A stretch of DNA of 64,000 nucleotides, from positions 1 through 64,000 of the IMG/VR virus record IMGVR_UViG_3300035156_000206; one strand, given 5' to 3'. Below the pieces are notes generated by a model. That model worked only from the letters and a program-made list of their open reading frames with translations. It made no database searches and had not been told where the DNA came from. Shown here in pieces: positions 1-12,606 of this stretch. The first letter of the stretch is position 1. The number at the start of each line of letters is the position of its first letter. The position numbers and the translations under genes are program-made.

Positions 1-6
1 CCAGGG

Positions 7-172
7 GGGTCGGGGCCCGGGGGGGTCGGGCGGTAGTTATTATGGGGCGGGTCGGGGTCGGGGGATGTACCGGAAGTTGGTGGTCGGGAAGGGGGGTCGG
101 GTCGGGGCCTTGTTGACCGGGGTCGGGTCGGGGGCTGGAGTTCCAATGACCAGTCGGGGTCGGGGGGGTCGG
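7..172 (+). repeat. Cluster of about 10 GGGTCGG heptamers, G-quadruplex-capable
   Basis: GGGTCGG at about 7, 23, 49, 55, 94, 99, 120, 125, 157, 166. Confidence 0.9.
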
Positions 173-426
173 ACAGTGAAGCTATTCATCCCACAGACGG
201 CTAACATGAACCTCAACTCGCCGAGTGTGATCTCATTGCCACCATCGGGCTCGGCATCGTACAGGAAGCGATAGACCTCTTCCTTATCTTCTTGTGTGGC
301 TTTGAAGTCTGTGAAGACATAGAGGATGTCTTCAAGAGCATGGTTAGGAAGTTGGTAAAGCTTCATGCTGTTGGAAAGAAGCTCACCAATCTTCTGGGAC
401 ATCAACGCAATGCGATGAGTGGTCAT
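40..426 (-). CDS. Hypothetical protein with Pro-rich C-terminus encoded by the GGGTCGG repeats
   Basis: 128-aa ORF; GGAG RBS; TTGACT-17-TATAAT promoter at 454-482. Confidence 0.65.
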   Translation of the reverse strand: MTTHRIALMSQKIGELLSNSMKLYQLPNHALEDILYVFTDFKATQEDKEEVYRFLYDAEPDGGNEITLGELRFMLAVCGMNSFTVRPPRPRLVIGTPAPDPTPVNKAPTRPPFPTTNFRYIPRPRPAP

Positions 427-1336: not shown

Positions 1337-1383
1337 TCGTCAGTTGATGTAATCATTATACTGACTTTTGGAAGAAAGTCAAC
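1337..1383 (-). promoter_or_regulatory. Conserved early promoter+leader repeat
   Basis: GTTGACT-17-TATAAT GATTACATCAACTGACGAA then GGAG. Confidence 0.9.
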
Positions 1384-1391
1384 TGCAATGC

Positions 1392-1413
1392 AAAAAGGAC
1401 CCGAAGGTCCTTT
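1392..1413 (-). terminator. Rho-independent terminator, UUCG loop
   Basis: AAGGACC-CGAA-GGTCCTT hairpin with A run on the + strand. Confidence 0.85.
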
Positions 1414-1415
1414 GC

Positions 1416-1988
1416 TTAATCGTACAGCGAACGATTGCTTGGTGCTTTAGGCTTTTTGGCTTTGGTCACACCCATCTTGATCAGCCATGCTTCGAAGTCA
1501 ACCAAGGTCATCATGATTGGGCCCAGATTGATGTCATCGTCTTGATGTCCGGTGCCTTCTCTGAACTGGTTGTATGGGAGGCAGTGGCCATCATCCTGCA
1601 ACTGGATAGAGTTCTTCCACTTGATGTATGTGAGCTGGTAGAACTCAGTGGGCTTCAGGCGGCACGACAGTTGCTTGCAGATGTACTTGATGATGTCTTC
1701 ATCAGGGAGAACCACATCCTTGACTGCACCAAGGTTGGCCTTGGCCAGGAATGCATCCAGCTCATCGATCGAGGTGAAGGTCTGGCGCTTCTTGACGTTG
1801 ACAACCTCGACGTTGACAACCTCGACGTTGTATTCCTTCTTGCCCGTCAACCAGTTCTTGTCGATGTCGAGATCAATCAGAAACTGACCCTTTGGAGTCG
1901 AGGCCCGAAACACCTGCATGTCCGGAGCATCGTGATACTTAGCGCGGCGTACCAGATTGTACTTCGCTTTGAGTTCTGTGAGTGTCAT
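1416..1988 (-). CDS. Hypothetical protein
   Basis: 190-aa ORF between repeat promoter and terminator. Confidence 0.85.
   Translation of the reverse strand: MTLTELKAKYNLVRRAKYHDAPDMQVFRASTPKGQFLIDLDIDKNWLTGKKEYNVEVVNVEVVNVKKRQTFTSIDELDAFLAKANLGAVKDVVLPDEDIIKYICKQLSCRLKPTEFYQLTYIKWKNSIQLQDDGHCLPYNQFREGTGHQDDDINLGPIMMTLVDFEAWLIKMGVTKAKKPKAPSNRSLYD
1794..1830. repeat. 15-bp tandem repeat, 2.5 copies, encodes NVEVV-NVEVV
   Basis: GACGTTGACAACCTC x2 plus GACGTTG. Confidence 0.85.
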
Positions 1989-2001
1989 TTGGTTTCTCCA
2001 T

Positions 2002-2049
2002 TTCGTCAGTCGATGTAATCATTATACTGACTTTTGGAAAAATGTCAAC
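2002..2049 (-). promoter_or_regulatory. Conserved early promoter+leader repeat
   Basis: TTGACA-17-TATAAT...GACTGACGAAA. Confidence 0.9.
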
Positions 2050-2051
2050 GG

Positions 2052-2414
2052 TTACAAAATGGGGCCACGTTGTGCATACGAGTAGTTGTTGACCATATCG
2101 GATTCCATCAACTCAACAAGGGACAAGTCCTTGGCGGCGTATCCACAGTACATGTCCGTCACATCCCCTGTGATATCAAACAGGCGACCGTTGATCCTGG
2201 ACAGGATATGACAATTATTGGTCAAGCAGACAGGCTGGGCATCAAAGGCCAATGCCAACATGATGGCAAGGTTGCCGCAATTACCTTTTGAGAATATCTC
2301 GGTGATGATATTCTTGGCGCAATCATCTGGATCAAGACCAGGACACCAACTTGCATCCTGGCTCCGAAGAGCAGATAAGAACAACTGCACCTCGGCTAAA
2401 TTTATCTGTTTCAT
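2052..2414 (-). CDS. Hypothetical protein, possible Cys-His-Asp (papain/transglutaminase-like) fold
   Basis: 120 aa; GNCGNLA...HILSRINGRLFDITG spacing. Confidence 0.7.
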   Translation of the reverse strand: MKQINLAEVQLFLSALRSQDASWCPGLDPDDCAKNIITEIFSKGNCGNLAIMLALAFDAQPVCLTNNCHILSRINGRLFDITGDVTDMYCGYAAKDLSLVELMESDMVNNYSYAQRGPIL

Positions 2415-2426
2415 TCAATCTCCAAA

Positions 2427-2474
2427 TTCGTCAGTCGATGTAATCATTATACTGACTTTTGGAAATTTGTCAAC
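2427..2474 (-). promoter_or_regulatory. Conserved early promoter+leader repeat
   Basis: TTGACA-17-TATAAT...GACTGACGAA. Confidence 0.9.
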
Positions 2475-2476
2475 TG

Positions 2477-2553
2477 TGGTAGGCCGTACTGGACTCGAAC
2501 CAGTGACCAATCCATTATGAGTGAACTGCTCTAACCAACTGAGCTAACGGCCC
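2477..2553 (-). tRNA. tRNA anticodon CAT, Ile2-like (or Met)
   Basis: GGGCCGT/ACGGCCT acceptor, CT-CAT-AA loop, GGTTCGAGTCC T-arm, CCA; body resembles bacterial Ile2. Confidence 0.85.
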
Positions 2554-2563
2554 CACATACAAC

Positions 2564-2585
2564 AAAGGACCCGAAGGTCCTTTTT
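2564..2585 (-). terminator. Terminator hairpin, same as 1392
   Basis: AAAGGACC-CGAA-GGTCCTTTTT. Confidence 0.8.
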
Positions 2586-2586
2586 A

Positions 2587-2841
2587 TTACGCAGTACGCT
2601 TCTGTGCGTACTTACTGCCTTTGTTGCCCTTGCCTTCAGGCGCTTTCGACTTCGGACGCTGGGCATCGCGTTCTGCTGCCAGCGTTTCGGCTTCACGCTT
2701 GATACGCTCCAGGGCACGAACGGTCTTCACCTTGCCGTGGATCGCCTTGGTCTGAGCCGGGCCTTTTTGACCTGCCAGGTGTAGGGCCGTGAACTGCTTG
2801 GCGATGATCTTCTTCTGTACTGCTTTGTTCTGACGAGTCAT
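2587..2841 (-). CDS. Small basic hypothetical protein
   Basis: 84-aa Lys-rich ORF inside tRNA cluster. Confidence 0.75.
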   Translation of the reverse strand: MTRQNKAVQKKIIAKQFTALHLAGQKGPAQTKAIHGKVKTVRALERIKREAETLAAERDAQRPKSKAPEGKGNKGSKYAQKRTA

Positions 2842-2877
2842 GTATCTCTTTCTGACGAGTGGAACTACTAAGGAAAC

Positions 2878-2952
2878 TGGATGCGGGAGGACGAATCGAA
2901 CGTCCGGGGCTTGGCTTATGAGACCTAGTTTGCCACCAACGACATTCCCGCA
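2878..2952 (-). tRNA. tRNA-Met/fMet-like (CAT), atypical
   Basis: TGCGGGA/TCCCGCA acceptor, CT-CAT-AA, TTCGATT T-loop, CCA; mismatch in anticodon stem and weak D-stem. Confidence 0.7.
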
Positions 2953-2960
2953 CTGAAACT

Positions 2961-3036
2961 TGGTGCCCTCAGCAGGATTCGAACCCGCGACCCCCTGATT
3001 ACAAATCAGGTGCTCTACCAGCTGAGCTATAAGGGC
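2961..3036 (-). tRNA. tRNA-Thr (TGT)
   Basis: canonical cloverleaf, TT-TGT-AA loop, CCA. Confidence 0.95.
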
Positions 3037-3052
3037 GAAACTTGTATTACTT

Positions 3053-3129
3053 TGGTGCCACGAGAGGGACTCGAACCCCCAACCTCCGGCTTCGTAGGCC
3101 AGCGCTCTATCCAGTTGAGCTATCGAGGC
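3053..3129 (-). tRNA. tRNA-Arg (ACG)
   Basis: canonical cloverleaf, CT-ACG-AA loop, CCA. Confidence 0.95.
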
Positions 3130-3146
3130 AGACTGCTATTTAGTGC

Positions 3147-3269
3147 TTACCACAACTTAGCAACAAAATGGGTCACAATCCATATCACAGCAATTGCACC
3201 AACAATGGCAGTACCACCCGCAATCACAATCACCATCTCAATTGCAGTAAAGCCGTTTTGCTGATTCAT
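3147..3269 (-). CDS. 40-aa type IV prepilin-like peptide
   Basis: Hand-translated MNQQNG|FTAIEMVIVIAGGTAIVGAIAVIWIVTHFVAKLW; class III signal motif; own promoter at 3302-3330. Confidence 0.75.
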   Translation of the reverse strand: MNQQNGFTAIEMVIVIAGGTAIVGAIAVIWIVTHFVAKLW

Positions 3270-3301
3270 CTTGCTCTCGCTGTTTGTTAACCGATGAAGA
3301 C

Positions 3302-3330
3302 AGTATACGGTGGCTTCATCAGTTAGTCAA
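3302..3330 (-). promoter_or_regulatory. sigma70-type promoter for prepilin-like ORF and tRNA cluster
   Basis: TTGACT-17-TATACT inside an inverted repeat. Confidence 0.75.
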
Positions 3331-3339
3331 CAGTTTTCT

Positions 3340-3609
3340 CTACAGCTTCACCCACTCATTGTAGATCTCTTCTGCCTCTGCCTTGATGGAGGCATCAATG
3401 TCCTCGTCCGTCATATCTGCAGTTCGGTCATCGTCCCAGATGGAGTACAGCTCAGTAGCAATAGTGTTCAAAGCTGTCAGCTTCGCATCCGGATCTTTGA
3501 TGTTGATGGCCAGCTCAGGCATATCACGAAGAGTATCTTCTTCACAGCTCTGGTTGTGAACTGCACCAATCAGTGCAGACTTGAACACGCGGAATGTACT
3601 GTTTGCCAT
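3340..3609 (-). CDS. Hypothetical protein
   Basis: start moved to MANSTF after GAGGAG RBS and repeat promoter. Confidence 0.8.
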   Translation of the reverse strand: MANSTFRVFKSALIGAVHNQSCEEDTLRDMPELAINIKDPDAKLTALNTIATELYSIWDDDRTADMTDEDIDASIKAEAEEIYNEWVKL

Positions 3610-3620
3610 TTCATTCTCCT

Positions 3621-3666
3621 CATCAGTTAATACATTCATTATACTGACTTTTGGAAAAATGTCAAC
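3621..3666 (-). promoter_or_regulatory. Early promoter+leader repeat (variant)
   Basis: TTGACA-17-TATAAT...AACTGATGAGGAG. Confidence 0.85.
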
Positions 3667-4397
3667 TAGGCTTTACGCATCACAAACAGAGTCATCGTCT
3701 TGTCTGGAATCTGTTGCAGTTTGTCCTGCTTCAGTTTCCATTGCTCCATGCCGGCAGGCGTCAGGCCCGAAGGTGCTGTACGAGGCAGGGGACGTGCAGA
3801 CCACAACTTGTCATCTGGCAGGTTGCTACCGTTGTAGACGAACGGTTTGCCATTTGCGTCTGGCATTGGGACACCATCAACAATCACATTGATGACATAG
3901 CCACGTGCACCAGCGGCGAGCTTCTTCCACAACTCAGCACCACCTTGGTATTGGGTGTTGTCGCTGATGATCGTCAAGCCCATCTCAACGAGGGCAACGT
4001 ACAGCATCGCACCGTAGCCACCACGAGCCATCTTCGGATCATTTGCAACGACGAGGTCGACCTGCACCGCACCTGGCAATTTAAGGCCCGGATTGCTGTT
4101 GCTGATCATCTGCTCTTTAAAGTCCAGCGTCACGTAGACGGCTGCACCAGCGACATTGTCTGCAGGACGAGTACCGCGCTTACCAATGAATGCTCCGCTG
4201 TGGTCTTGGCGAATGTAGACGACGTAGTTCGGGTCGTCCTTCACCAGCTTGAATTCATCGGCCAAGGTCCGATCGCTAAAGAAGTGATCGAAGCTGCTGG
4301 TATCCATTTGGAGCTTTTTTGGTTTGCCATCGGCATCTTCAGGGGCGTATGGCATCTCTTTGAGCAGGTTCTCGTTAAGTATTTGGTCTAATCGCAT
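3666..4397 (-). CDS. Late protein with GNAT-like motif A and N-terminal ILNE, possible internal head protein
   Basis: 243 aa; MRLDQILNE; ARGGYGAMLY; TAAATA at 4420-4425. Confidence 0.7.
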   Translation of the reverse strand: MRLDQILNENLLKEMPYAPEDADGKPKKLQMDTSSFDHFFSDRTLADEFKLVKDDPNYVVYIRQDHSGAFIGKRGTRPADNVAGAAVYVTLDFKEQMISNSNPGLKLPGAVQVDLVVANDPKMARGGYGAMLYVALVEMGLTIISDNTQYQGGAELWKKLAAGARGYVINVIVDGVPMPDANGKPFVYNGSNLPDDKLWSARPLPRTAPSGLTPAGMEQWKLKQDKLQQIPDKTMTLFVMRKA

Positions 4398-4418
4398 TTG
4401 GGTTCCTTTGTTATGGGC

Positions 4419-4718
4419 TTATTTAGCCTCGAACTGAGACAAGAACTCCAGGCAGTCCTTCAAGCCATCACGGCCGACGAACACAATATGATCTTGATCT
4501 TCGGGGCCATAGACAACGAGGATGTTGCATTCGTCCATGTCGAGGCTCTGGCGACCATTACGATCCCCGTACACCCAGTGGCGACCATAGGCACCTGCTT
4601 TGGTGTTGATGAGCTCTTTGATCTCGTCATCATCGTATACCTTGTCCTGCGAGCCATGCGTGACGGCACCGAACACTTTAACCTCAGACAATGGAGGTGG
4701 GCTGTAGATGGTAATCAT
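4419..4718 (-). CDS. Hypothetical protein
   Basis: start moved to MITIYS after repeat leader. Confidence 0.75.
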   Translation of the reverse strand: MITIYSPPPLSEVKVFGAVTHGSQDKVYDDDEIKELINTKAGAYGRHWVYGDRNGRQSLDMDECNILVVYGPEDQDHIVFVGRDGLKDCLEFLSQFEAK

Positions 4719-4727
4719 TGAATGCCT

Positions 4728-4776
4728 TTCGTCAGTTGATATTCCTATTATACTGACTTTCTTACAAAAAGTCAAC
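4728..4776 (-). promoter_or_regulatory. Conserved early promoter+leader repeat
   Basis: TTGACT-17-TATAAT...AACTGACGAAAGG. Confidence 0.9.
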
Positions 4777-4793
4777 TGACGTAGGCTTAAAAG

Positions 4794-5087
4794 TTATGTC
4801 GCATCCGATGTGCGTCTTTGTGGCATTCTTGAGACCAGTTCTTCGAACCAGCCTGGGACGCGCTTGTAGTTGATGTACGCGGCAATGTGCTTGGGATAAA
4901 CTTGCTCCAGCTTTGCCAGGTCATCTGCATCAGCAATCCAGATCAACTCCCAGAGGGCGTTGTTGAATTTGTCTGCTGTGCCGTAGTGCTTGCATTTGAT
5001 TAGGGATAACTCTCCCTCGTCCAGATCGATGTCTGGCTTAGCATCCTCAGGACGCTGCTCTTCCTTAGGATCACCAATAATGTACAT
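4794..5087 (-). CDS. Hypothetical protein
   Basis: 97-aa ORF; GGAGG RBS; TTGACA-17-TATAGT promoter near 5120-5148. Confidence 0.8.
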   Translation of the reverse strand: MYIIGDPKEEQRPEDAKPDIDLDEGELSLIKCKHYGTADKFNNALWELIWIADADDLAKLEQVYPKHIAAYINYKRVPGWFEELVSRMPQRRTSDAT

Positions 5088-5166
5088 CTTGATACCTCCG
5101 TTGTGAGTGTCAGTAAGTCACTATACTGTGTTACGGAGGAAATGTCAACGATCACATCGCAAAAGG

Positions 5167-5186
5167 AAAAGGACCCGAAGGTCCTT
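5167..5186 (-). terminator. Terminator hairpin, same as 1392
   Basis: AAGGACC-CGAA-GGTCCTT with A run. Confidence 0.8.
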
Positions 5187-5191
5187 GTCTC

Positions 5192-5368
5192 TCAATCCAT
5201 TTCAGACTGAGTCAGTTTATCGATTGCTTGGTTGTAGCTTCGGCGCATCGCACGCATGAAAGCTTTGCGTCCTTTACGGCCGCTTGGTGCACAGCATGAG
5301 CAGTGCAAACCTCCACCACCGAGCTTGGCATGGCAGGTTTTGAGAAAGTGTTTCTTTTCGCGAATCAT
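5192..5368 (-). CDS. Small basic CxCC protein
   Basis: start moved to MIREKK after GGAG RBS; GGGGLHCSCC motif. Confidence 0.65.
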   Translation of the reverse strand: MIREKKHFLKTCHAKLGGGGLHCSCCAPSGRKGRKAFMRAMRRSYNQAIDKLTQSEMD

Positions 5369-5420
5369 GGTTAGGGTCTCCTTATAATAACCTAATGCAT
5401 GGTACGCTCCTTTCTTTTGT

Positions 5421-5617
5421 TGGGCAGGACTAGATGGAATCGCACCACCGACCTCTTGGTTAAATACCAAGCGCTCTACCATCACGGCCGTTGGTTGGAG
5501 CACCCAGGTAACGTTACCTCCCGGGCGAGTCTGACGTCGTTTCGTGATGTTGGACATTCACATTAACGAGGAGGCCTCCCCGTCGCAGCCGCAGTCCACA
5601 AACTGAGCTATAGTCCC
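5421..5617 (-). ncRNA. tRNA-like RNA (UUU anticodon) with 120-nt insertion in the D-loop
   Basis: GGGACTA/TAGTCCT acceptor, GCTC/GAGC D-stem, CTTGG/CCAAG anticodon stem, GGTGG/CCATC T-stem; insert 5481-5600. Confidence 0.8.
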
Positions 5618-5629
5618 ATTGATCTGTAA

Positions 5630-5719
5630 TGGCGGAAACGGTGGGATTCGAACCCACGGGCCCTGTTACGGGCCGCCGGTTTAGCAAACCGGTGCCTTAA
5701 GCCTCTCAGCCACATTTCC
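5630..5719 (-). tRNA. tRNA-Ser (GCT)
   Basis: class II cloverleaf, TT-GCT-AA, long variable arm, CCA. Confidence 0.95.
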
Positions 5720-5736
5720 GAACAACTATTTATTCG

Positions 5737-5827
5737 TGGCGGAAGCGGTGGGATTCGAACCCACGGAGCCCTTTCGGACTCGGCAGTTTTCAAGACTGCT
5801 GCCTTAAACCAGCTCGGCCACGCTTCC
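5737..5827 (-). tRNA. tRNA-Ser (TGA)
   Basis: class II cloverleaf, CT-TGA-AA, CCA. Confidence 0.95.
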
Positions 5828-5846
5828 TTAGTTAAGCACTACGTTA

Positions 5847-5938
5847 CCCGGAGGGAACTAGACGGATCTCCACTCTGACTGCCTTTCGGCACCTGGCGAT
5901 TTCCAAAGAGTCCGAACCTACCCTAGCCGATAACTGGG
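5847..5938 (-). ncRNA. Candidate rod-like RNA with GAAA tetraloop
   Basis: nested helices GCTAG/CTAGT, CGGA/TCCG, ACTCT/AGAGT, TGCC-GAAA-GGCA; no ORF; first unit after promoter. Confidence 0.5.
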
Positions 5939-5998
5939 AGAAATTGTTGCCATCTCCTTCAATAAATCAGAGGCCTACGCAGCGCTTCACTAATGACA

Positions 5999-6026
5999 AT
6001 TATACGCATTGCTACGTAAATGTCAA
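5999..6026 (-). promoter_or_regulatory. sigma70-type promoter for the Ser-tRNA cluster
   Basis: TTGACA-16-TATAAT. Confidence 0.75.
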
Positions 6027-6115
6027 CAGTTACTTTTCTGGATCGAGCCTACATACGATCCAGATCACAATGAGCTTGATCACTGTAACCAAGCTCACAA
6101 TTTCGAAGAACGTCA

Positions 6116-6862
6116 TTACAGACCGTGCTTGATGATCAGGCCGAACACTTCGTCCAGGGACGAGACCTCATTCACCTTGATGCTGACCTGGCGTCCGCCG
6201 GCCATCGGGAACGTCATTTCGTAGCGCGGGATGTGCGTGGCTTCGCCGATGCGATCCATGTGGTTGGGCAACTGTTGAACCGGTGCCTTTGCAACAGGAG
6301 CAGCATGCGCGCCAGAGATGGTTTCCTTGTTCTCGGCCTTGCGAGCGAGACGTTCAGCCTTCTTCGATGCCGATTCAGCTTCTTCGGCCGAGCGGTGCAT
6401 ATTCTTCTGGTACGACACTTTGCTCTTGGCCGATGTGATGGCGCGCTGATGAGTGCCGAGTTGTTCTGGCGACATGTCAGCCGTTGGAATCGCTTGCAGT
6501 GCCAGCAGGGCCGTTTGTGCTGCTTCCATCTTCGGCTTGATCTCTGCTGCGGTGGTTGTTTTGCGTGCCATGGTATTTCCTTTCGTCATTTGAGTGGAGT
6601 GTGTCCAACCCGTTGGAGGTGTGTACTCGGTCTCTGTTCCAAGTTCACTATTAATCACGATACCCAATGTATCGCGTACATGCTCCCGCGCCTTTGTCAG
6701 GTTCGGGAAAGGCTGATCGTCTACCGTCCAGCGCTTCTCCGGATGAGGCATACGTACCCCATCCGAAGTCTCCCCACGAACAATGAACTGGTCAATGTCC
6801 GGGAAGGAGCCATAGCGCTTATTGGGAAACAACCTTATTGCTGTAGTCGCACTGTTCTTCAA
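6116..6862 (-). CDS. Hypothetical protein with possible internal start MARKTT at 6571
   Basis: 248-aa ORF; promoter TTGATT-17-TATAAT near 6910-6938; internal RBS TGACGAAAGGA. Confidence 0.75.
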   Translation of the reverse strand: MKNSATTAIRLFPNKRYGSFPDIDQFIVRGETSDGVRMPHPEKRWTVDDQPFPNLTKAREHVRDTLGIVINSELGTETEYTPPTGWTHSTQMTKGNTMARKTTTAAEIKPKMEAAQTALLALQAIPTADMSPEQLGTHQRAITSAKSKVSYQKNMHRSAEEAESASKKAERLARKAENKETISGAHAAPVAKAPVQQLPNHMDRIGEATHIPRYEMTFPMAGGRQVSIKVNEVSSLDEVFGLIIKHGL

Positions 6863-6933
6863 TATATCCCCTCGTCAGCTATTTTGATCAACGCTTAGTT
6901 GATAAGGCTATTATACTGAAATTTGGAAATTAA

Positions 6934-7620
6934 TCAACTCTTTTTTGTAAGATTGTGGTAATAGGTAGACGCACCAGCTTCTGTCAATCCTGCATCACGA
7001 ACTAGCTTCTTGATGACTGTCTTGCGGCTGCGGTCTTTGTTGCGCTTGATGATCCAGATGGCTTTGTCCTTCTTGGTACCAAATGCAATCTTCTCAGGCA
7101 TAGAGGTAGGAACATGGACTGGCTCCGAAGGAACGAGTCTGGTTTTGCAAGCAACACATTGGTACTTGTCCAACATGATCTTGCGGCGCATGATGCTGGC
7201 GTAGACGTGACTATCGTCGTTGCAAGCACAAAGGAACTTGTAGGTGGTGAACTGACGTTTGCTGATGTTCGTATCCAACCCATGACACCGATCAGGCTTC
7301 AGCCCCATCAGGATCATAATTGCCTTCCATTCCTTACCATGCGCTTGGGTATCATGTCCGTGAATGTGCTCTGTGATGACGTGAGCAACCTCATGAGGTA
7401 CAATTTGGTATAGGAACGCAGAAGGGTACGCACTCAGCAATATGGGATCGAAATTGACATGGTAGTGGATACCACGAGCCCAGCCAGCAGTCGTGTAGCT
7501 ACGCTGGTAGGTGATGATAAGAGGAGGAAGGTTTAAATCAGGATACACTGCCTCCACGCGTGCGATTGAGTCGAGGACGACAGCACGAACTTGGTTGTGG
7601 AGGTCAGGAGGGATGTTCAT
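6934..7620 (-). CDS. SprT-like zinc metalloprotease with Cys cluster and C-terminal repeat-family domain
   Basis: HEVAH (HExxH), HGKEWK, CxC...CxxC; C-terminal GLTEAGASTYYHN. Confidence 0.85.
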   Translation of the reverse strand: MNIPPDLHNQVRAVVLDSIARVEAVYPDLNLPPLIITYQRSYTTAGWARGIHYHVNFDPILLSAYPSAFLYQIVPHEVAHVITEHIHGHDTQAHGKEWKAIMILMGLKPDRCHGLDTNISKRQFTTYKFLCACNDDSHVYASIMRRKIMLDKYQCVACKTRLVPSEPVHVPTSMPEKIAFGTKKDKAIWIIKRNKDRSRKTVIKKLVRDAGLTEAGASTYYHNLTKKS

Positions 7621-7644
7621 GTCCCTATTTATGGGCAACTAATG

Positions 7645-7751
7645 CCATATGGGGTGAGTTGTGGGCCCGTAATTCGCGCTTCATCGCTAGCGCCGCCAAA
7701 GGCGGCAAAGCTTGGTTCGCACTTTTCTGTTTGCACAACCCACCCCATATG
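7645..7751 (-). ncRNA. Candidate ~106-nt structured RNA
   Basis: about 18-bp closing stem CATATGGGGTG-GGTTGTG/CACAACT-CACCCCATATG plus inner hairpins. Confidence 0.65.
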
Positions 7752-7758
7752 ACACTAT

Positions 7759-7898
7759 GTAGATGACTAAAGGGTGGCCACCGAAGGCGCCTGCGAGAAG
7801 GGAAGCCTGACGAAAGGAGGAGGTCTCAGCCCGCCTTGGGGGGAAGGTGGATCTCTACTTTACGCAAGCGGCCTCGGCGCCACTCTTTAATCGACTAC
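7759..7898 (-). ncRNA. 140-nt sRNA with C-rich loops, antisense to early leader/SD
   Basis: promoter 7905-7933 predicts +1 near 7898; ends pair; hairpin contains ACCUCCUCCUUUCGUCAG. Confidence 0.75.
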
Positions 7899-7904
7899 AA
7901 GATC

Positions 7905-7933
7905 ATTTTATCACATACATCGTCAAAAGTCAA
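7905..7933 (-). promoter_or_regulatory. sigma70-type promoter of the 140-nt sRNA
   Basis: TTGACT-17-TAAAAT. Confidence 0.8.
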
Positions 7934-7949
7934 CGATTAATTCTGGGAT

Positions 7950-8213
7950 GAAGATTCAACTAGAGCTACTGCTGATGCAGGACTTAGGTAGCTACTCCCA
8001 GTCGTACACCAGCCTTCGAGTCCATCTCCGCTGACTCGCGCTCGATCCGGCATCCCCTGTCAGGGCCCTTCAACTGATTGGCTGCATGAGTGGTCTCAGT
8101 GTTCACGAACTGGTGCTCTATGCGCGGCACTCAACGAGCCGCAGAACGCGCGTTCATTAGTACTAAGCCCTACAGGCTGACAGGCCTGTTCACTCACTTC
8201 TAGTTGAACCTTC
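7950..8213 (-). ncRNA. Candidate 264-nt multi-helix RNA
   Basis: 15-bp closing helix GAAGGTTCAACTAGA/TCTAGTTGAATCTTC; CCTGTCAG/CTGACAGG; several hairpins; no credible ORF. Confidence 0.7.
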
Positions 8214-8322
8214 TTTATGAGCATGTCTCTATATAATGGCATGCGCATAAAGAAGATCCCTCTTCTTCCTAGTTTCCGTTCTAGGTTATGGGGCACTCCC
8301 CATTCGGTAACTGCAAGTTATT

Positions 8323-8475
8323 TGGTACCGGGGGCAGGCCTCGAACCTGCAAAAAAGCAAACTCAACACGGCCGTGCCTTGTTCGCCCTTACAACCCATG
8401 GCCTCCCCACTCACCTAGTCTAGCTTCACTGAGCAGGTACTAACACAGGGCGTCTACCACTTTCGCCACCCCAGC
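8323..8475 (-). ncRNA. tRNA-Leu-like RNA with about 60 extra nt in the anticodon/variable region
   Basis: GCTGGGG/CCCCGGT acceptor, Leu-type D-arm GGCGAAAGTGGTAGACGC, GCAGG-TTCGAGG-CCTGC T-arm, ACCA; 153 nt. Confidence 0.75.
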
Positions 8476-8483
8476 ATAACTCT

Positions 8484-8645
8484 TTAGTCGACGAGGTCAC
8501 CCGCGTCAACAAAACTTTCACCCCAACGAACCATCAGGCCAAGCAGGAAGCCAACAACGGCACCGATAACAGGCTCTGCCCAGACATAATGTCCAACGAC
8601 GGCACCGAGAGCAGTACTCAACACCAACAGCAAAAATGTCAACAT
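8484..8645 (-). CDS. Small membrane protein, 53 aa
   Basis: hand-translated MLTFLLLVLSTALGAVVGHYVWAEPVIGAVVGFLLGLMVRWGE...; AAGGAG RBS. Confidence 0.65.
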   Translation of the reverse strand: MLTFLLLVLSTALGAVVGHYVWAEPVIGAVVGFLLGLMVRWGESFVDAGDLVD

Positions 8646-8661
8646 GCACTACTCCTTAAAA

Positions 8662-9059
8662 TGGGTCCCCCTTTCGATGACAGGGACTAGTGAACCTTTC
8701 GGCTCAGTAGCGGGGGATTATTTCAACCCTGCAAAGTTAGTTAGGCGTAAGCCGCTACTTTGAATTGTGAGTCGTTTGCATTTACATGCTTGCATCTTTT
8801 CGCCTTACGGCCGAGGATCGCTTCTCGTGTTGTCAACCTACGGTTATCTCACCACGTCGAAACCAGGTCGCCCCCATCAGCTGCACTTTCAGGTCTATGT
8901 CTGGTGTACCAGTCCTGAGAATTGATGTTATCTCATCTTCGAAAGCGCAGTTGGTGGAGGCGGCGGGAATCGAACCCGCGTCCGCAATGCCTTCACTTTG
9001 GCATCTGGATAGGTCTTACCCTACCCCACAACAATGTATCCGTTGATTTCTCAACTGAT
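8662..9059 (-). ncRNA. ssrA: Circularly permuted (two-piece) tmRNA
   Basis: acceptor piece ending GGTTCGATTCCCGCCGCCTCCACCA at 8952 is transcribed before GGGGGCGACCTGGTTTCGAC at 8875; tag ANDSQFKVAAYA at 8741-8779; outer ends approximate. Confidence 0.9.
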
Positions 9060-9065
9060 GAAGCC

Positions 9066-9094
9066 ATTATATAGACTTCTTCAGTTGAAGTCAA
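9066..9094 (-). promoter_or_regulatory. sigma70-type promoter of the tmRNA/ncRNA operon
   Basis: TTGACT-17-TATAAT inside inverted repeat. Confidence 0.8.
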
Positions 9095-9103
9095 CAGTTA
9101 ATT

Positions 9104-9439
9104 TCACAAGAGCTGATCAGCCAGCTTGACCAACTCGGCACGGTCCAGTTCAAACTCCGGACGCAGACGCTCCTGTTTCGACGATTGTGCCTCAGGCCAG
9201 TATGCCAGCTCATGAGGAGTCTTCATGGTCGAATGGTGAATCCCAGCCAAGCGGTTCCACTTCAACTCGGTTGGATGGAAGACCGAGATGATCGCATGCG
9301 ACTGGAAGTCATACGAGTCGCTCTTGATCGAGATGGACAACTTGTGCCCCTTCATTTCGAAAACTTGATGCAGCGTCAATGACTGACGCGCTTTAAGAAT
9401 TTCGTCCTGAATCATTTTGATCTTGGATGCTTTTGCCAT
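9104..9439 (-). CDS. Hypothetical protein
   Basis: 111 aa; downstream of repeat promoter, AAGGAG. Confidence 0.8.
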   Translation of the reverse strand: MAKASKIKMIQDEILKARQSLTLHQVFEMKGHKLSISIKSDSYDFQSHAIISVFHPTELKWNRLAGIHHSTMKTPHELAYWPEAQSSKQERLRPEFELDRAELVKLADQLL

Positions 9440-9455
9440 TTTGTTCTCCTTGGGT

Positions 9456-9503
9456 TTCGTCAGTTGATATAGCTTATTATACTGACTTTTGGAAAAATGT
9501 CAA
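9456..9503 (-). promoter_or_regulatory. Conserved early promoter+leader repeat
   Basis: TTGACA-17-TATAAT...AACTGACGAAA. Confidence 0.9.
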
Positions 9504-9955
9504 CTGGCTTTCCAAGGGTTAGCTTTGGGAATCACTTCGCCATTCTTGACCTTGTAGAACTCGCTACCTTCCTGGCGGTACAGTGGACTGACCTTGGCGT
9601 CAGCTATTTCAGCATTCGCTAAATCGTCCCAGAGAGCTTCCAGGTGCTCGTAGTAGTTCTTCCGGTGATGCTTGCGGTACAGCCGGTTGACGTCTTCCAT
9701 CGTGAAGCCGTGCTTCCGCATGTACGGACCCAACTGGTCAATTGGGTCGCCACCGTCGCAGGCGTAGCCGAGGGCATTATCGGCAGCCTGATAGAGAGCC
9801 TGCAACTTCAGGTCATTGATGGCCTTGCGTTCAGCAGCGGTCTGCCTCTTAGGCGCATCATAGCTTTCGCGCCACGCTTCCACTCCCGATTGGTTCAGGT
9901 TGCGGAAGCGTTTGTAGGTGCCCGATTTATTTGGGACTTGAACGGATGAGCTCAT
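9500..9955 (-). CDS. Hypothetical protein
   Basis: start moved to MSSSVQ, ATGA overlap with upstream stop. Confidence 0.75.
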   Translation of the reverse strand: MSSSVQVPNKSGTYKRFRNLNQSGVEAWRESYDAPKRQTAAERKAINDLKLQALYQAADNALGYACDGGDPIDQLGPYMRKHGFTMEDVNRLYRKHHRKNYYEHLEALWDDLANAEIADAKVSPLYRQEGSEFYKVKNGEVIPKANPWKAS

Positions 9956-10146
9956 GGCGCAGTGTAGGTGAACAAGCACATTGCTTGTTGTTGAAGGACG
10001 GAACGACCACGGTCGCAATTGTTGATCTTGGTGACTGCCGCAATGGCAACCAAAGGATCGTCAAACGCGACGGTGATAGTATGGACAGCAACCTGACCAC
10101 CATTTGGGGTCATGGTAGTGGTCACCAGGATTTGGAATTGGCTCAT
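9952..10146 (-). CDS. Hypothetical protein
   Basis: 64 aa; ATGA overlaps on both sides. Confidence 0.65.
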   Translation of the reverse strand: MSQFQILVTTTMTPNGGQVAVHTITVAFDDPLVAIAAVTKINNCDRGRSVLQQQAMCLFTYTAP

Positions 10147-10715
10147 GCCCAGATCCCCTTGCGCAGGTTGTATTCGTACGTCGTCGCACCTGGCTTCGAC
10201 AACTGGAGTTCTTTCATGAACAGCTCGATGATCTGGTGCTTGTCAGGCATGTTCGCAATGTTCTGCTTGTACAGTGCGATACAGCGGTCTTTCTTCGACA
10301 TGCCACTCGAACGAGCGATGCGTGGCTTCTTGGCTGTGGTACCGAGTTCTTCAGCCGCAATGACTGCTTCAGCGTGCTTCTCGGCAATCACGTCAGGATT
10401 GACCCATGGGTTCTTTGCGAGGAACTCACCAGCCTTCTTCTGCGCCAGAGCAATGGCTTGGTCAATCTCCATGTACTCTTTCATGTTGTAGAAGCGGACC
10501 GATTCCTGGATCAGGTAGCCAAACACCAATTCGGCAACCTTAACATCCTTCGTTTCCACATCCTGCTCCGTGAGCTCCTTGATGTAGGCATCGAAGTTGC
10601 ACTTCAGACCTGCAGCACGCTCAATCAGGTTGTCGCGGACGAAGTACTGTGCCGAAACAAAACTGTCAGTTGGAATGCCCATCGCTTTGATACGTTCAAT
10701 GATTACTGGTACCAT
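10143..10715 (-). CDS. Protein with C-terminal repeat-family domain
   Basis: start moved to MVPVII after AAGGAG; LSKPGATTYEYN motif; promoter at 10753-10780. Confidence 0.8.
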   Translation of the reverse strand: MVPVIIERIKAMGIPTDSFVSAQYFVRDNLIERAAGLKCNFDAYIKELTEQDVETKDVKVAELVFGYLIQESVRFYNMKEYMEIDQAIALAQKKAGEFLAKNPWVNPDVIAEKHAEAVIAAEELGTTAKKPRIARSSGMSKKDRCIALYKQNIANMPDKHQIIELFMKELQLSKPGATTYEYNLRKGIWA

Positions 10716-10821
10716 GATGACTTCTCCTTCGTCGTTGGATTCAATATAGACAATTATACTCACTTTTGGAAAAATGTCAACAGTTGCTTTCCAAATAAAT
10801 AAAGCATCATAGGAGCACACA

Positions 10822-11073
10822 ATGGCAATAGAACCATCCGGCATCATATATTTGTTGAAGAAGATCGAGGTAGCGGCAGATATCGAAACGACACTGGCAG
10901 AGATTTATATCAACCTGCCAACATGCATCAATCGCGCAATTGGAACCCTCCAGTGTACTCAATTAGAAAACGAGTACCGAGGGGTCATGCAGAAACTGAA
11001 GGTCGACTTTGAGTTCGACCTTCATCAAGCTTTCAAAGACCAGGTTGGAAAGATCCTGGCCCGTCCACGTTAA
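10822..11073 (+). CDS. Hypothetical protein, probably late
   Basis: 83 aa; AGGAG RBS; TAAATA at 10796-10801. Confidence 0.65.
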   Translation: MAIEPSGIIYLLKKIEVAADIETTLAEIYINLPTCINRAIGTLQCTQLENEYRGVMQKLKVDFEFDLHQAFKDQVGKILARPR

Positions 11074-11606
11074 TGGACTGTGGTGTTCGGCGGCACTGAA
11101 GCTTCTGGCTCACCATTCTCGGCCCGCTCCTGAGCCGCCCGTCCGGCCATCATCAATGATACGATGGCTGCGACGAGTGGATGCTGCTCGCGCTCCTCTT
11201 CATCATCGTCACCATGAACCATTTGGCAACCAGGGCACCAGCCTTCAGGCTTGTCTTCATCGCCGGCCTTGGTTTTGATCTCGGCCTTCTTGCGAGCCAC
11301 GAATTCGTCAACAGCACCCTTCGTGATGATCTTGTGCTCTTCCAGGATCACGAGCATCTCGCCCATGACTTCGGACACGCCAGCAATCAAGCCAAGTGGC
11401 ATCGCAATTTGTGCGTGCCCGATTTGGTTCATGGTAAGGCCAGGTGGCGCCTGTTCCAGGATGTGTTCCATCGCATCAGCAAACTTCTCATGCAACGCAG
11501 CGGCCCCGGCCGCAACATGCAAGATGCGTTCTTCTTTTGACATACCAGCGAGGAACTCCTCGTGGTCCTTTTTCTGCTCAGCTTGCTTCTCTTTGGTCGT
11601 TGCCAT
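11070..11606 (-). CDS. Hypothetical protein
   Basis: 178 aa; GACGAAAGGG leader; promoter near 11637-11664. Confidence 0.8.
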   Translation of the reverse strand: MATTKEKQAEQKKDHEEFLAGMSKEERILHVAAGAAALHEKFADAMEHILEQAPPGLTMNQIGHAQIAMPLGLIAGVSEVMGEMLVILEEHKIITKGAVDEFVARKKAEIKTKAGDEDKPEGWCPGCQMVHGDDDEEEREQHPLVAAIVSLMMAGRAAQERAENGEPEASVPPNTTVH

Positions 11607-11737
11607 TTTATTCCCTTTCGTCTAAGTGATGTGTTCATTATAGACAGAATTTGTGTAAAGTCAACAGTAATATTGAGATAGCATTATTAAGCAAAAGCTA
11701 TTATAATGAGGGAACTATACAACTTCGGGAGTTTCCC

Positions 11738-11992
11738 ATGTCGCATGCTCTAGTGACCCTCATTGATGAGGTTTTGAAAGACGCTGAGGTTCATGATGTT
11801 GAGGTGTCAATCCAAGTCGACACCGGATCGAAGACGATGGGTGCATCTTATAAGGACGATGTTGGGATGTGCCGCTACTACGTCAATGATATCGATGCCC
11901 TGTGGTATGAGATCCAGAAGGAACTGGAAGGCGAACAAACCTCAATGATCGACGCTTTTTGGTCAATCTTGAATACCGTATATAAGATTTAA
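11738..11992 (+). CDS. Hypothetical protein
   Basis: start moved to MSHALV after GGGAG. Confidence 0.7.
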   Translation: MSHALVTLIDEVLKDAEVHDVEVSIQVDTGSKTMGASYKDDVGMCRYYVNDIDALWYEIQKELEGEQTSMIDAFWSILNTVYKI

Positions 11993-12130
11993 ATGAAAAA
12001 CCATTGAGAAATCTCAAGGGCCTTAGCAGATTACCGTTGATTTCTGATATTTCCACCGTATGATTAAGTTATCAACTCTACCGCACTCAATAGTGGGAGC
12101 GGGGAAGTTACTAACCCAAGGAGAATCAAG

Positions 12131-12463
12131 ATGGCAACCTCGAATCGTAATCACGGCTCTAAAGCACCATTGGTCCCTGAGCCACAGCACACCGGCCGCA
12201 ACGCGGAATCGTTCTCGACGCAGCAAGGCAGCAACAAAGCAGCCATTGCCCGCAAAATCTTTAACGAGATCGGTACCGACCAGCCACGCAAGGCCGTCAT
12301 CGAGCGCTTCCAGTCCGAAGCACACCTGACCCCTGCAGGCGCGGCAACCTACTACCAGAACATGAAAAAAGAAGCCGGCCTCGTCGCAGTTGGCGGCCCA
12401 GGCAACACACGCGCGCAAAACAATGCGCCGGCTGAAGGCGGCGCAGCAACGGCCAAGAAATAA
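12131..12463 (+). CDS. Small basic protein, repeat-family domain
   Basis: 110 aa; LTPAGAATYYQN motif; AAGGAG RBS; terminator follows. Confidence 0.8.
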   Translation: MATSNRNHGSKAPLVPEPQHTGRNAESFSTQQGSNKAAIARKIFNEIGTDQPRKAVIERFQSEAHLTPAGAATYYQNMKKEAGLVAVGGPGNTRAQNNAPAEGGAATAKK

Positions 12464-12509
12464 TTCACTTACCGGTGATTATCTGGCCCCCTTTATGGTG
12501 GCCATGTTT

Positions 12510-12536: not shown

Positions 12537-12545
12537 ATCCCTACT

Positions 12546-12593: not shown

Positions 12594-12606
12594 AGGGAGA
12601 TACAAA

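What the first reader, a model, noticed from the sequence alone, without database searches (positions are those of the whole stretch)
3147..3269. Unannotated 40-aa type IV prepilin mimic heading a tRNA operon
Seen: this ORF is below the track cutoff and reads MNQQNG|FTAIEMVIVIAGG...; it has G(-1), F(+1), E(+5) and a hydrophobic helix, its own promoter, and no globular pilin head. Established: this is the PilD prepilin-peptidase substrate motif of type IV pili and T2SS pseudopilins. Inference: a headless pilin that poisons pilus assembly or occupies PilD, giving superinfection exclusion or loss of twitching/secretion.
Basis: partly seen in the sequence, partly recalled or inferred. Interest (0 to 1): 0.75.

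Follow-up and report, generated by a model that had tools for sequence, protein, structure and literature searches.

The report
Phage micro-pilin with conserved tail
The 40-codon reading frame is a real gene of a jumbo phage: it belongs to an apparently undescribed family of tiny phage membrane peptides, one branch of which starts exactly like a bacterial pilus subunit, so the phage probably feeds a headless decoy into its host's pilus or secretion machinery, though that action is untested.

Summary
Observation confirmed. window 3147-3269 (-) encodes a 40-aa peptide with a canonical type IVa prepilin start (leader ending in G6, then F7, T8, E11) and one hydrophobic helix. NCBIfam TIGR02532 scores above its cut-off and Pfam N_methyl exactly at its cut-off. 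It is the only such ORF among 4,121 in the 292-kb phage genome.

It is not a chance ORF. More than 100 distinct relatives of 31-50 aa exist. Wherever the context could be read they lie in phages or a prophage: T4-like and T5-like Aeromonas phages, an N4-like Stenotrophomonas phage, a Paraburkholderia lambdoid prophage, and jumbo and mega phages.

That tail also occurs on many relatives with no prepilin motif. In an N-terminus-blind scan, 24 of 30 lacked it.

In the prepilin branch G-1 and E+5 are invariant (64/64), T+2 is 63/64, and the mature length is fixed at 34 aa in 50 of 64. Processing by host PilD is therefore likely.

Poisoning of pili or type II secretion is plausible but untested. 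The tail-only relatives suggest that helix plus tail is the effector and the pilin head a targeting or processing module.

No paper, Pfam family or PHROG describes the family.

The parts
3147..3269 (-). CDS of the 40-aa micro-pilin (P0001), stop codon included
   Evidence: ORF list and sequence. Full-length relatives of 37-44 aa at 43-49% identity. Single helix, residues 9-39, pLDDT 91.8.
3252..3269 (-). Codons 1-6: class III (prepilin) leader M-N-Q-Q-N-G; predicted PilD cleavage after G6
   Evidence: N_methyl and TIGR02532 matches. G-1 is invariant in 64/64 subfamily members and the leader is mostly 6-7 aa. The window copy's leader has no K or R, which is atypical. Cleavage itself is inferred.
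3237..3251 (-). Codons 7-11: F(+1) T(+2) A I E(+5), the start of the predicted mature peptide
   Evidence: +1 is F57/Y6/V1, +2 is T63/S1 and E+5 is 64/64 in the subfamily. A PDB profile search aligns residues 1-26 to the N-termini of major type IV pilins.
3150..3170 (-). Codons 34-40: C-terminal tail H-F-V-A-K-L-W, followed directly by the stop
   Evidence: H, F, K and W are invariant in 66 prepilin-type and 38 tail-only relatives. The tail always lies at the C-terminus.
3302..3330 (-). Sigma-70-like promoter candidate TTGACT-17-TATACT
   Evidence: Consensus scan, 10 of 12 positions. Weak evidence: shuffles of the region give about 2.7 such sites.
3274..3278 (-). Weak Shine-Dalgarno-like GAGAG, 4 nt before the ATG
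   Evidence: Read directly from the sequence.
3280..3333 (-). Stable RNA hairpin between the upstream gene's stop and the ORF, overlapping the promoter candidate
   Evidence: Free energy -21.2 kcal/mol, z -3.16 against shuffles. No U-run follows. Role unknown.
3636..3665 (-). Upstream copy of the repeated strong early promoter (TTGACA-16-TATAAT); read-through from it could also express the ORF
   Evidence: 11 copies of the 30-nt element in window 1353-16468.
3053..3129 (-). tRNA-Arg(ACG), 17 nt downstream of the ORF's stop
   Evidence: ARAGORN and Rfam.
2961..3036 (-). tRNA-Thr(TGT)
2878..2952 (-). tRNA-Met(CAT)

Best explanation
Shown. window 3147-3269 (-) is a real gene of an uncultivated jumbo myovirus from a biocrust metagenome. 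It encodes a 40-aa single-helix peptide. The peptide belongs to a phage-borne family of 31-50-aa peptides defined by one transmembrane helix that ends in an invariant C-terminal tail, [Y/W]-V-A-x-H-F-x-x-K-x-W-COOH. The window copy belongs to the branch whose N-terminus is a canonical type IVa prepilin signal.

Inferred mechanism:
1. The gene is expressed early, from host sigma-70-type promoters, possibly on one transcript with three tRNAs.
2. The peptide inserts in the inner membrane with its N-terminus inside and its tail at the periplasmic face.
3. Host prepilin peptidase (PilD/GspO type) cuts after G6 and N-methylates F7. The phage encodes no such peptidase.
4. The 34-aa mature peptide uses the pilin-like F1...E5 helix start to enter the assembly platform of type IV pili, type II secretion or competence pseudopili. 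There it acts as a dominant-negative subunit. It has no head domain to build the fibre, and the aromatic-cationic tail holds it at the membrane surface or binds a platform component.
5. The expected result is fast shutdown of pili or secretion. That would give exclusion of pilus-dependent competitor phages and prevent progeny adsorbing to infected cells.
For: Real gene and family:
- An exhaustive HMMER search found six full-length hits of 40-44 aa.
- Profile searches found 28 and then 93 members.
- Alignments show invariant G6, F7, T8, E11, H34, F35, K38 and W40.
- Many members have good Shine-Dalgarno sites.

Phage or prophage context in every readable case:
- Metagenomic and IMG/VR contigs of 27 kb up to 157, 169, 249, 353 and 497 kb, made of arrays of small same-strand genes.
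- Aeromonas phages Ahp1_CNU-2021 and vB_AdhS_TS3.
- Stenotrophomonas phage C121.
- A Paraburkholderia prophage, about 1 kb downstream of the S24 repressor gene.

Prepilin head under selection:
- G-1 64/64; +1 F/Y/V; T+2 63/64; E+5 64/64; L+3 50/64; L+6 53/64.
- Leader mostly 6-7 aa, net charge +1 to +3.
- Mature length 34 aa in 50 of 64.

Other support:
- The head aligns to the N-termini of major type IV pilins only.
- The phage has no prepilin peptidase and no T2SSE-type ATPase, so the host must supply them.
- The three cultured-phage or prophage hosts named above (Aeromonas, Stenotrophomonas, Paraburkholderia) are proteobacteria. The closest terminases belong to Xanthomonas, Stenotrophomonas and Ralstonia jumbo phages.
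- From established knowledge (not tested here), G-1 is the PilD cleavage determinant and E+5 is needed for pilus assembly, not for cleavage.
Against: - No experiment or prediction links the peptide to PilD or to pili. The PilD co-fold returned no answer.
- The most conserved module is the tail. In a scan blind to the N-terminus, 24 of 30 IMG/VR family members have no prepilin motif.
- Decayed heads exist: A-Y-T-L-V-D in L146, E to D in P0046, E to V in P0092. The family's function can therefore apparently survive without PilD processing.
- The window copy's leader has no basic residue, unlike most members.
- T4-like, T5-like and N4-like carriers are not known to use pili as receptors, so any benefit would have to be indirect.
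- No transcription data exist for this phage.
Confidence: 0.42

Rival explanations
1. The effector is helix plus tail, and the target is not the pilus. The family's common function lies in the transmembrane helix with the HFxxKxW-COOH tail at the periplasmic face. It would act on some other conserved envelope component or on the membrane itself: for example blocking DNA entry by a superinfecting phage, a transporter or energy-transducing complex, an envelope stress sensor that reads C-terminal aromatic residues, cell division, or membrane potential. In this branch the prepilin head would be only a way to insert the peptide N-in and have the charged leader trimmed by PilD.
For: - H, F, K and W of the tail are invariant in both classes, while N-termini are interchangeable: prepilin head, plain basic N-terminus, or longer cytoplasmic extensions including a Cys-rich one.
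- 24 of 30 members in the N-terminus-blind scan lack the motif.
- Decayed heads are tolerated.
- No conserved neighbour gene exists. The only recurrent neighbour is an AAA/clamp-loader-like core gene of related phages. This fits a host target, or a peptide that acts on its own.
Against: - Within the prepilin branch, E+5, L+3, L+6 and a fixed mature length are conserved as in true pilins. A mere insertion or cleavage signal would not need that.
- A charged Glu inside a membrane helix is costly unless it is used.
Confidence: 0.33
2. PilD decoy. The peptide is a pseudo-substrate that occupies or inhibits the host prepilin peptidase. This would block maturation of all pilins and pseudopilins together.
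For: - The substrate motif is perfect and the peptide is very small.
- Early expression from strong promoters is plausible.
- The tail could provide extra affinity.
Against: - Cells hold a pool of already processed pilins, so blocking PilD would act slowly compared with a lytic cycle.
- Conservation of E+5 is not explained by binding to the cleavage site (established knowledge).
- The co-fold with P. aeruginosa PilD gave no answer.
Confidence: 0.12
3. Assembled virus-encoded pilin. The peptide is polymerised by the host machinery into a thin surface filament, or into host pili, changing the surface properties of the infected cell. The archaeal provirus SNJ2 does this with its own pilins.
For: - Virus-encoded type IV pilins that hijack host machinery are documented (PMC12426801).
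- The Geobacter pilin PilA-N shows that short pilins can form fibres. It is among the PDB hits.
Against: - A 34-aa mature peptide is almost entirely hydrophobic and has no soluble surface.
- The amphipathic tail looks like a membrane-interface anchor.
- Most carriers are lytic phages with little time to build filaments.
Confidence: 0.05
4. Chance ORF in an intergenic spacer upstream of the tRNAs; not a gene.
For: The ORF is short, its promoter and Shine-Dalgarno signals are weak, and there are no expression data.
Against: - More than 100 relatives of conserved length, with invariant residues at both ends, occur in unrelated phages.
- The ORF is unique in its genome.
- The random-genome rate is 1 in 60 or lower.
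Confidence: 0.02

Closest known systems
Type IVa major pilins and type II secretion pseudopilins (class III signal peptide; Pfam N_methyl PF07963, NCBIfam TIGR02532)
   Same: Short leader ending in Gly, then F-T-L/A-I-E and a hydrophobic alpha1-N helix. The family consensus of the first 16 residues is close to that of the major pilins that the profile hits in the PDB, such as MshA and PilA.
   Different: It has no alpha1-C helix and no globular head. The mature peptide is 34 aa, against about 140-170 aa for the major pilins hit in the PDB. It has a unique invariant C-terminal tail. It is encoded by phages, not in pilus or secretion operons.
Geobacter PilA-N ('Geopilin domain 1'), the shortest pilin among the PDB hits (61-90-aa chains)
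   Same: A truncated pilin consisting mostly of the N-terminal helix. It is among the best PDB profile hits, E 2.6e-6.
   Different: PilA-N is still about twice as long. From my own knowledge, it pairs with a separate head-like protein (PilA-C). It is a host structural gene and lacks the HFxxKxW tail.
PfsE of Pseudomonas filamentous phage Pf4 (PMC8764522)
   Same: A very small phage-encoded protein that suppresses type IV pili and excludes pilus-dependent phages by binding the platform protein PilC. This is the functional model proposed here.
   Different: The paper's abstract mentions no prepilin signal. From my own knowledge PfsE is not pilin-like. No sequence comparison was made here, and no PilC binding has been shown for the present family.
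Other phage inhibitors of type IV pili: D3112 Gp05 (Tip), DMS3 Aqs1, vB_Pae_QDWS Gp21 (review PMC11436027)
   Same: Phage genes that shut down the pilus to give superinfection exclusion.
   Different: According to the review, Gp05 and Aqs1 act on the PilB ATPase and Gp21 lowers expression of PilA and PilB. They are not pilin mimics.
Virus-encoded type IV pilins of the haloarchaeal provirus SNJ2 (PMC12426801), and pilin-like genes annotated in phages such as the Xanthomonas phage PhiXhv-15 99-aa 'type IV pilus subunit' and the Synechococcus phage ACG-2014f 'pilin'
   Same: Viral genes with a class III signal that depend on host machinery.
   Different: Those proteins keep a C-terminal domain, and in SNJ2 they are assembled into filaments. 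The present family is headless and carries the conserved tail.

Membership tests
Prepilin-type N-terminal cleavage/methylation domain (PF07963 / TIGR02532) | HMM score at or above the curated cut-off | tested here: met
   TIGR02532 gives 20.4 bits against 16.3. PF07963 gives 21.2 against 21.2, exactly at the cut-off, and 20.7 in the six-frame search. Eight members of alignment A5 match PF07963, best E 4e-8.
Prepilin-type N-terminal cleavage/methylation domain (PF07963 / TIGR02532) | Short leader ending in Gly(-1), hydrophobic +1 (usually Phe), Glu(+5), then about 20 hydrophobic residues | tested here: met
   G6, F7 and E11, followed by an uninterrupted hydrophobic run. These residues are invariant across the subfamily. 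The window copy's leader lacks a basic residue.
Prepilin-type N-terminal cleavage/methylation domain (PF07963 / TIGR02532) | Cleavage and N-methylation by a prepilin peptidase | not testable with these tools
   The co-fold with P. aeruginosa PilD gave no answer. Biochemistry is needed.
Type IV pilin / pseudopilin (structural subunit) | Globular C-terminal head domain after the alpha1 helix | tested here: not met
   40 aa in total. The model is one helix, residues 9-39. PDB profile hits cover residues 1-26 only.
Type IV pilin / pseudopilin (structural subunit) | Encoded with pilus or secretion assembly genes (PilB/C/D, Gsp) | tested here: not met
   No Peptidase_A24 and no T2SSE above cut-off in the 292-kb phage genome. 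The neighbours are small phage genes and tRNAs.
Flp/Fap (type IVc, Tad) pilins, PF04964 | Match to the Flp_Fap HMM and the G/xxxxEY motif | tested here: not met
   No PF04964 match at E up to 10. Residue +6 is Met, not Tyr.
HFxxKxW-tail phage micro-membrane peptides (family delimited here) | 31-50 aa, one transmembrane helix, invariant H-F-x-x-K-x-W as the last seven residues | tested here: met
   P0001 ends HFVAKLW-stop. It aligns end to end with relatives. Profile E 8.6e-17.
HFxxKxW-tail phage micro-membrane peptides (family delimited here) | Carried by phages or prophages, in early or accessory regions | tested here: met
   The window lies in a jumbo myovirus, among 11 repeated early promoters. 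Relatives.
PfsE-like pilus inhibitors | Binds PilC and suppresses twitching and pilus-phage infection | not testable with these tools
   This is a functional definition (PMC8764522).

The most novel reading that the evidence does not exclude
A widespread, so far undescribed family of 31-50-aa phage inner-membrane peptides with an invariant HFxxKxW-COOH tail is a general anti-envelope effector. One branch has captured the 5' end of a host pilin gene. Host PilD then matures the peptide and the pilus or type II secretion platform takes it up as an anchored, headless chain-terminator pilin. This would be a new mechanism of receptor or secretion shutdown, used by T4-like, T5-like, lambdoid and jumbo phages of proteobacteria.
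Probability: 0.3. Interest if true: 0.8.

Novelty: new variant of a known kind. Interest (0 to 1): 0.66.

Why it matters
Phage micro-proteins below annotation cut-offs are mostly ignored. This one turns out to be a conserved family spread across very different phages, three of which are in culture (two Aeromonas phages and one Stenotrophomonas phage). The idea is therefore directly testable.

If the prepilin branch is processed by PilD and blocks pili or type II secretion, it would be the first pilin-mimic inhibitor. It would give a minimal 34-residue probe of how pilins are recognised, extracted and polymerised at the assembly platform. It would also be a natural lead for anti-virulence peptides against pili and type II secretion.

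If instead the tail is the effector, the family points to a conserved envelope target that many phages hit early in infection.

Tried and rejected
- Close relatives of the phage. Megablast of the region against cultured phages found only a 47-nt tRNA match. The two neighbouring proteins have no relatives in IMG/VR. Synteny with a close relative could not be used.
- tblastn of the window peptide against cultured phages found nothing. This is probably the effect of the low-complexity filter, because family member P0008 did find the Aeromonas phages.
- The word-indexed protein search with the single peptide found only the peptide itself. The family appeared only with the exhaustive HMMER search.
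A tighter alignment worked.
- Flp/Tad pilin idea: rejected.
- Phage-encoded PilD or pilus ATPase: none found.
- Conserved partner gene. The only recurrent neighbour is an AAA/clamp-loader-like protein (phrog_1250) shared by three related phage lineages. It is not a functional partner.
- Co-fold with P. aeruginosa PilD: no answer, not evidence either way.
- Expression data. The only DNA run holding most of the region is a biocrust metagenome; a second holds only 6% of the sampled words. RNA runs hold only tRNA-like words.
- ESM Atlas feature search: hits all under 0.9, leads only, nothing usable.
- Bacterial genomes. The scan of 185,579 species genomes gave only N-terminal matches to ordinary pilins. 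L111 and L112 are full-size pilins.
- Literature. Eight searches found no description of a headless phage pilin or of the tail motif.
- No tree was built to test whether the prepilin branch is monophyletic. 40-residue sequences are too short for a reliable tree.

Full report
1. THE OBSERVATION

The ORF at window 3147-3269 on the minus strand is there as described. It is 40 codons long. Its six-residue leader ends in G6, followed by F7-T8-A-I-E11 and an unbroken hydrophobic stretch, and it ends H-F-V-A-K-L-W-stop.

- Pfam N_methyl scores 21.2 bits, exactly at the gathering cut-off, E 2.1e-4.
- NCBIfam TIGR02532 scores 20.4 bits against a cut-off of 16.3.
- The window is the first 64 kb of an IMG/VR virus record of 291,967 bp, 48% G+C, with 29 tRNA genes and a permuted tmRNA.
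- Among the 4,121 ORFs of 25 aa or more in that genome, only this one fits a class III signal pattern.
- Of 60 random genomes with the same dinucleotide statistics, 1 gave a loose match and 0 gave a G-F match.
- AlphaFold2 with the family alignment models a single helix, residues 9-39, at mean pLDDT 91.8. There is no head domain.

2. IT IS A REAL GENE AND A MEMBER OF A FAMILY

- The word-indexed search with the single peptide found only the peptide itself.
- The exhaustive HMMER search of 1.84 billion representatives found six hits. All are 40-44 aa, aligned end to end at 43-49% identity.
- Profile searches raised this to 28 and then 93 cluster representatives. Scans of IMG/VR added more.
- In the alignment of 28 members, G6, F7, T8, E11, H34, F35, K38 and W40 are invariant, and the tail always abuts the stop codon.
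- Many members have strong Shine-Dalgarno sequences.

This conservation of length and of both ends, across sequences that otherwise differ by more than half, excludes a chance ORF.

3. WHERE THE FAMILY LIVES

Every context I could read is a phage or prophage.

- Metagenomic and IMG/VR contigs from 27 kb up to 157, 169, 249, 353 and 497 kb. They consist of arrays of small same-strand genes with phage markers: dCMP deaminase, Pol III alpha, HNH, Lar, SprT-like, NAD kinase, CCA-adding enzyme, Thg1.
- Aeromonas phage Ahp1_CNU-2021 (Straboviridae). A 42-aa 'hypothetical protein', QIW87140.1, lies 24 nt after a tRNA-Ser in the tRNA region.
- Aeromonas phage vB_AdhS_TS3 (Demerecviridae). An unannotated 37-aa ORF.
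- Stenotrophomonas phage C121 (Schitoviridae). Gene C121_12, a tail-only member in the early region.
- An uncultured 462-kb phage.
- A lambdoid prophage in a Paraburkholderia genome. WP_223191138.1 lies about 1 kb downstream of the S24 CI-like repressor on the same strand, ahead of RecT, YqaJ and the integrase.

The scan of 185,579 species genomes returned only N-terminal matches to ordinary full-size pilins.

The window's own phage is a jumbo myovirus with portal, sheath and terminase genes. Its terminase is about 49% identical to those of Xanthomonas phages Xoo-sp13 and XacN1. Stenotrophomonas CM1/RAS14 and Ralstonia RsoM2USA follow. The sample is a biocrust metagenome. A proteobacterial host is likely but not shown.

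The most conserved part is not the prepilin head but the C-terminal tail. Three IMG/VR hits carried the tail without any G-F-T-x-x-E.

I then scanned IMG/VR with a DNA pattern for HFI[S/T/R/C]KFW-stop, which is blind to the N-terminus. It gave 35 loci and 30 small ORFs of 31-50 aa. Only 6 have the prepilin motif and 24 do not.

Among the 104 collected representatives that end in the tail, 66 are prepilin-type and 38 are tail-only. This set is biased by my queries. The tail consensus is the same in both classes, with H, F, K and W invariant.

N-termini are interchangeable: the prepilin head, a plain basic N-terminus, or longer cytoplasmic extensions.

Decayed heads also exist: A-Y-T-L-V-D in L146, E to D in P0046, E to V in P0092. 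The family's function can therefore apparently persist without PilD processing.

No Pfam or PHROG family covers the tail, and no paper in the library contains the motif.

5. THE PREPILIN BRANCH BEHAVES LIKE A TRUE PREPILIN N-TERMINUS

Figures are for 64 short representatives.

- G-1 is 64/64; +1 is F57/Y6/V1; +2 is T63/S1; E+5 is 64/64.
- L+3 is 50/64 and L+6 is 53/64.
- The leader is mostly 6-7 residues with net charge +1 to +3, and has Q at -3 in 50/64.
- The mature length is 34 aa in 50, 31 aa in 8 and 35 aa in 6.
- A profile of the branch hits only residues 1-26 of solved major pilins (MshA, PilA, Geobacter PilA-N, PilE).

By established knowledge (not tested here), G-1 is the determinant of PilD cleavage. 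E+5 is required for pilus assembly and not for cleavage. Invariance of E+5, the pilin-like L+3/L+6 and the fixed spacing to the tail argue that the head does more than provide a cleavable signal.

The window copy keeps all the invariant residues. It is atypical in two ways: its leader has no basic residue, and its tail reads HFVAKLW.

6. EXPRESSION SIGNALS IN THE WINDOW

- The ORF lies in an early-type region that carries 11 copies of a 30-nt near-perfect sigma-70 promoter element, between 1353 and 16468.
- One copy sits at 3665-3636, upstream of the preceding 99-aa gene.
- The ORF's own candidate promoter is TTGACT-17-TATACT at 3330-3302. It is a weaker match of a kind that also arises by chance.
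- A stable hairpin overlaps that promoter candidate (-21.2 kcal/mol, z -3.2). Its role is unknown.
- tRNA-Arg, tRNA-Thr and tRNA-Met follow 17 nt after the stop on the same strand. No terminator-like site was found between them.
- Direct abutment to a tRNA gene recurs: in L017, tRNA-Met starts 5 nt after the stop; in Ahp1, the ORF starts 24 nt after tRNA-Ser. tRNAs lie within 1 kb in L030 and L035. Most other contexts have none.

Co-transcription with tRNAs is plausible but not shown. The recurrence may only reflect that both tRNAs and small accessory genes collect in the plastic early regions of large phages. No RNA data set holds this phage.

7. MECHANISM

Shown:
- It is a conserved phage gene for a single-helix membrane peptide, with a canonical prepilin head and an invariant C-terminal tail.
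- The phage has no peptidase or pilus ATPase of its own.

Inferred:
- N-in/C-out insertion in the inner membrane.
- Cleavage after G6 and N-methylation of F7 by host PilD.
- Entry of the 34-aa mature peptide into the platform of type IV pili, type II secretion or competence pseudopili through the F1...E5 helix start.
- Dominant-negative action, because no head domain exists and the aromatic-cationic tail stays at the membrane surface or binds a platform component.

I give this 0.42.

The main rival, at 0.33, is that helix plus tail is the effector against a different conserved envelope target. The head would then be only a device for insertion and trimming. A pure PilD decoy (0.12), an assembled viral pilin (0.05) and a chance ORF (0.02) follow.

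The PilD co-fold returned 'no answer' and counts for nothing either way.

8. COMPARISON WITH WHAT IS KNOWN

- The head is a member of the prepilin N-terminal domain family. The HMM and motif tests are met.
- The peptide is not a structural pilin or pseudopilin. The head-domain and operon tests are not met.
- It is not an Flp pilin.
- The nearest functional analogue is PfsE of phage Pf4, a tiny phage protein that binds PilC and blocks pili (PMC8764522). Other phage pilus inhibitors act on the PilB ATPase or lower expression of PilA and PilB (PMC11436027).
- Virus-encoded pilins that hijack host machinery are known in a haloarchaeal provirus (PMC12426801). Pilin-like genes with small heads are annotated in several phages.
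- A headless pilin with a conserved tail, and the tail family as a whole, were not found in the literature library searched, in Pfam or in PHROGs. RefSeq and JGI label some members only as 'prepilin-type N-terminal cleavage/methylation domain-containing protein'.

9. VERDICT

The finding is a new variant of known kinds (prepilin-like proteins; small phage membrane effectors). It is directly testable in three cultured phages. Interest 0.66.

Noticed in passing
window 1353-16468 (mostly minus strand): Eleven copies of a 30-nt near-perfect sigma-70 promoter element (TTGACA, a fixed 16-nt spacer, TATAAT, then GA), against none expected by chance. It looks like an array of strong early promoters driving short operons of small genes.
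   Followed up: partly
window 8650-9044 (-): A phage-encoded permuted (two-piece) tmRNA with tag peptide ANDSQFKVAAYA. Rfam tmRNA_permuted scores 108 bits. Permuted tmRNAs are typical of alpha-proteobacteria, some beta-proteobacteria and some cyanobacteria (my own knowledge). This could help to find the host.
   Followed up: no
window 3280-3333 (-): A stable hairpin (-21.2 kcal/mol, z -3.2) lies between the stop of the 99-aa gene and the micro-pilin ORF, overlapping the ORF's promoter candidate. No U-run follows. It could be a processing site, an operator or an attenuator.
   Followed up: partly
G000 1-200 and 291768-291967 (window 1-200 for the first): The record starts in G-rich GGGGTCGGG-type repeats and ends in a long GGCGTT tandem repeat. 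The assembly probably broke in repeats. IMG/VR classes the ends as linear, and completeness is estimated at 84%.
   Followed up: no
G000 258286-271723 (outside the window) and window 2477-5827: Twenty-nine tRNA genes in two clusters, all on the minus strand. They include duplicated Asn, Pro, Gln, Tyr and Ser genes, and one ARAGORN call with an undetermined anticodon at 268847-268922.
   Followed up: no
window 6934-7638 (-), 2052-2414 (-), 62225-63862 (+): A SprT-like metalloprotease (E 1.9e-12) and a YunG-like protein, and a nicotinamide phosphoribosyltransferase about 50% identical to those of Ralstonia and Xanthomonas jumbo phages. A SprT-like gene also lies on the 27-kb contig that carries family member P0007.
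   Followed up: no
L027 8001-8093 (IMG/VR contig of 312 kb): A prepilin-type family member that stops right after the His that would begin the tail (it ends ...Y-K-A-T-H-stop). It is probably a truncated or decaying copy.
   Followed up: no
L146 9772-9894; P0046; P0092: Family members with a decayed prepilin head: A-Y-T-L-V-D in L146, G-Y-T-L-T-D in P0046, and G-F-T-A-I-V in P0092. They suggest repeated loss of PilD dependence with the tail kept.
   Followed up: partly
L119 1501-1800 (Xanthomonas phage PhiXhv-15); hits H35-H56: Other cultured phages carry pilin-like genes with small heads: a 99-aa 'type IV pilus subunit' in 228-kb Xanthomonas phages, 'pilin' in Synechococcus phage ACG-2014f, and entries in Acinetobacter phage Acibel004. 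PAK_P1-like Pseudomonas phages (for example vB_PaeM_G1) gave weaker hits (E about 1 or higher) lying in genes annotated only as hypothetical proteins. Phage use of class III signals seems broader than this family.
   Followed up: partly
L118 2501-2614 (Aeromonas phage vB_AdhS_TS3, OP820700.1 7483-7596): The 37-aa family member is not annotated in the GenBank record. The gap between two annotated genes holds it.
   Followed up: yes
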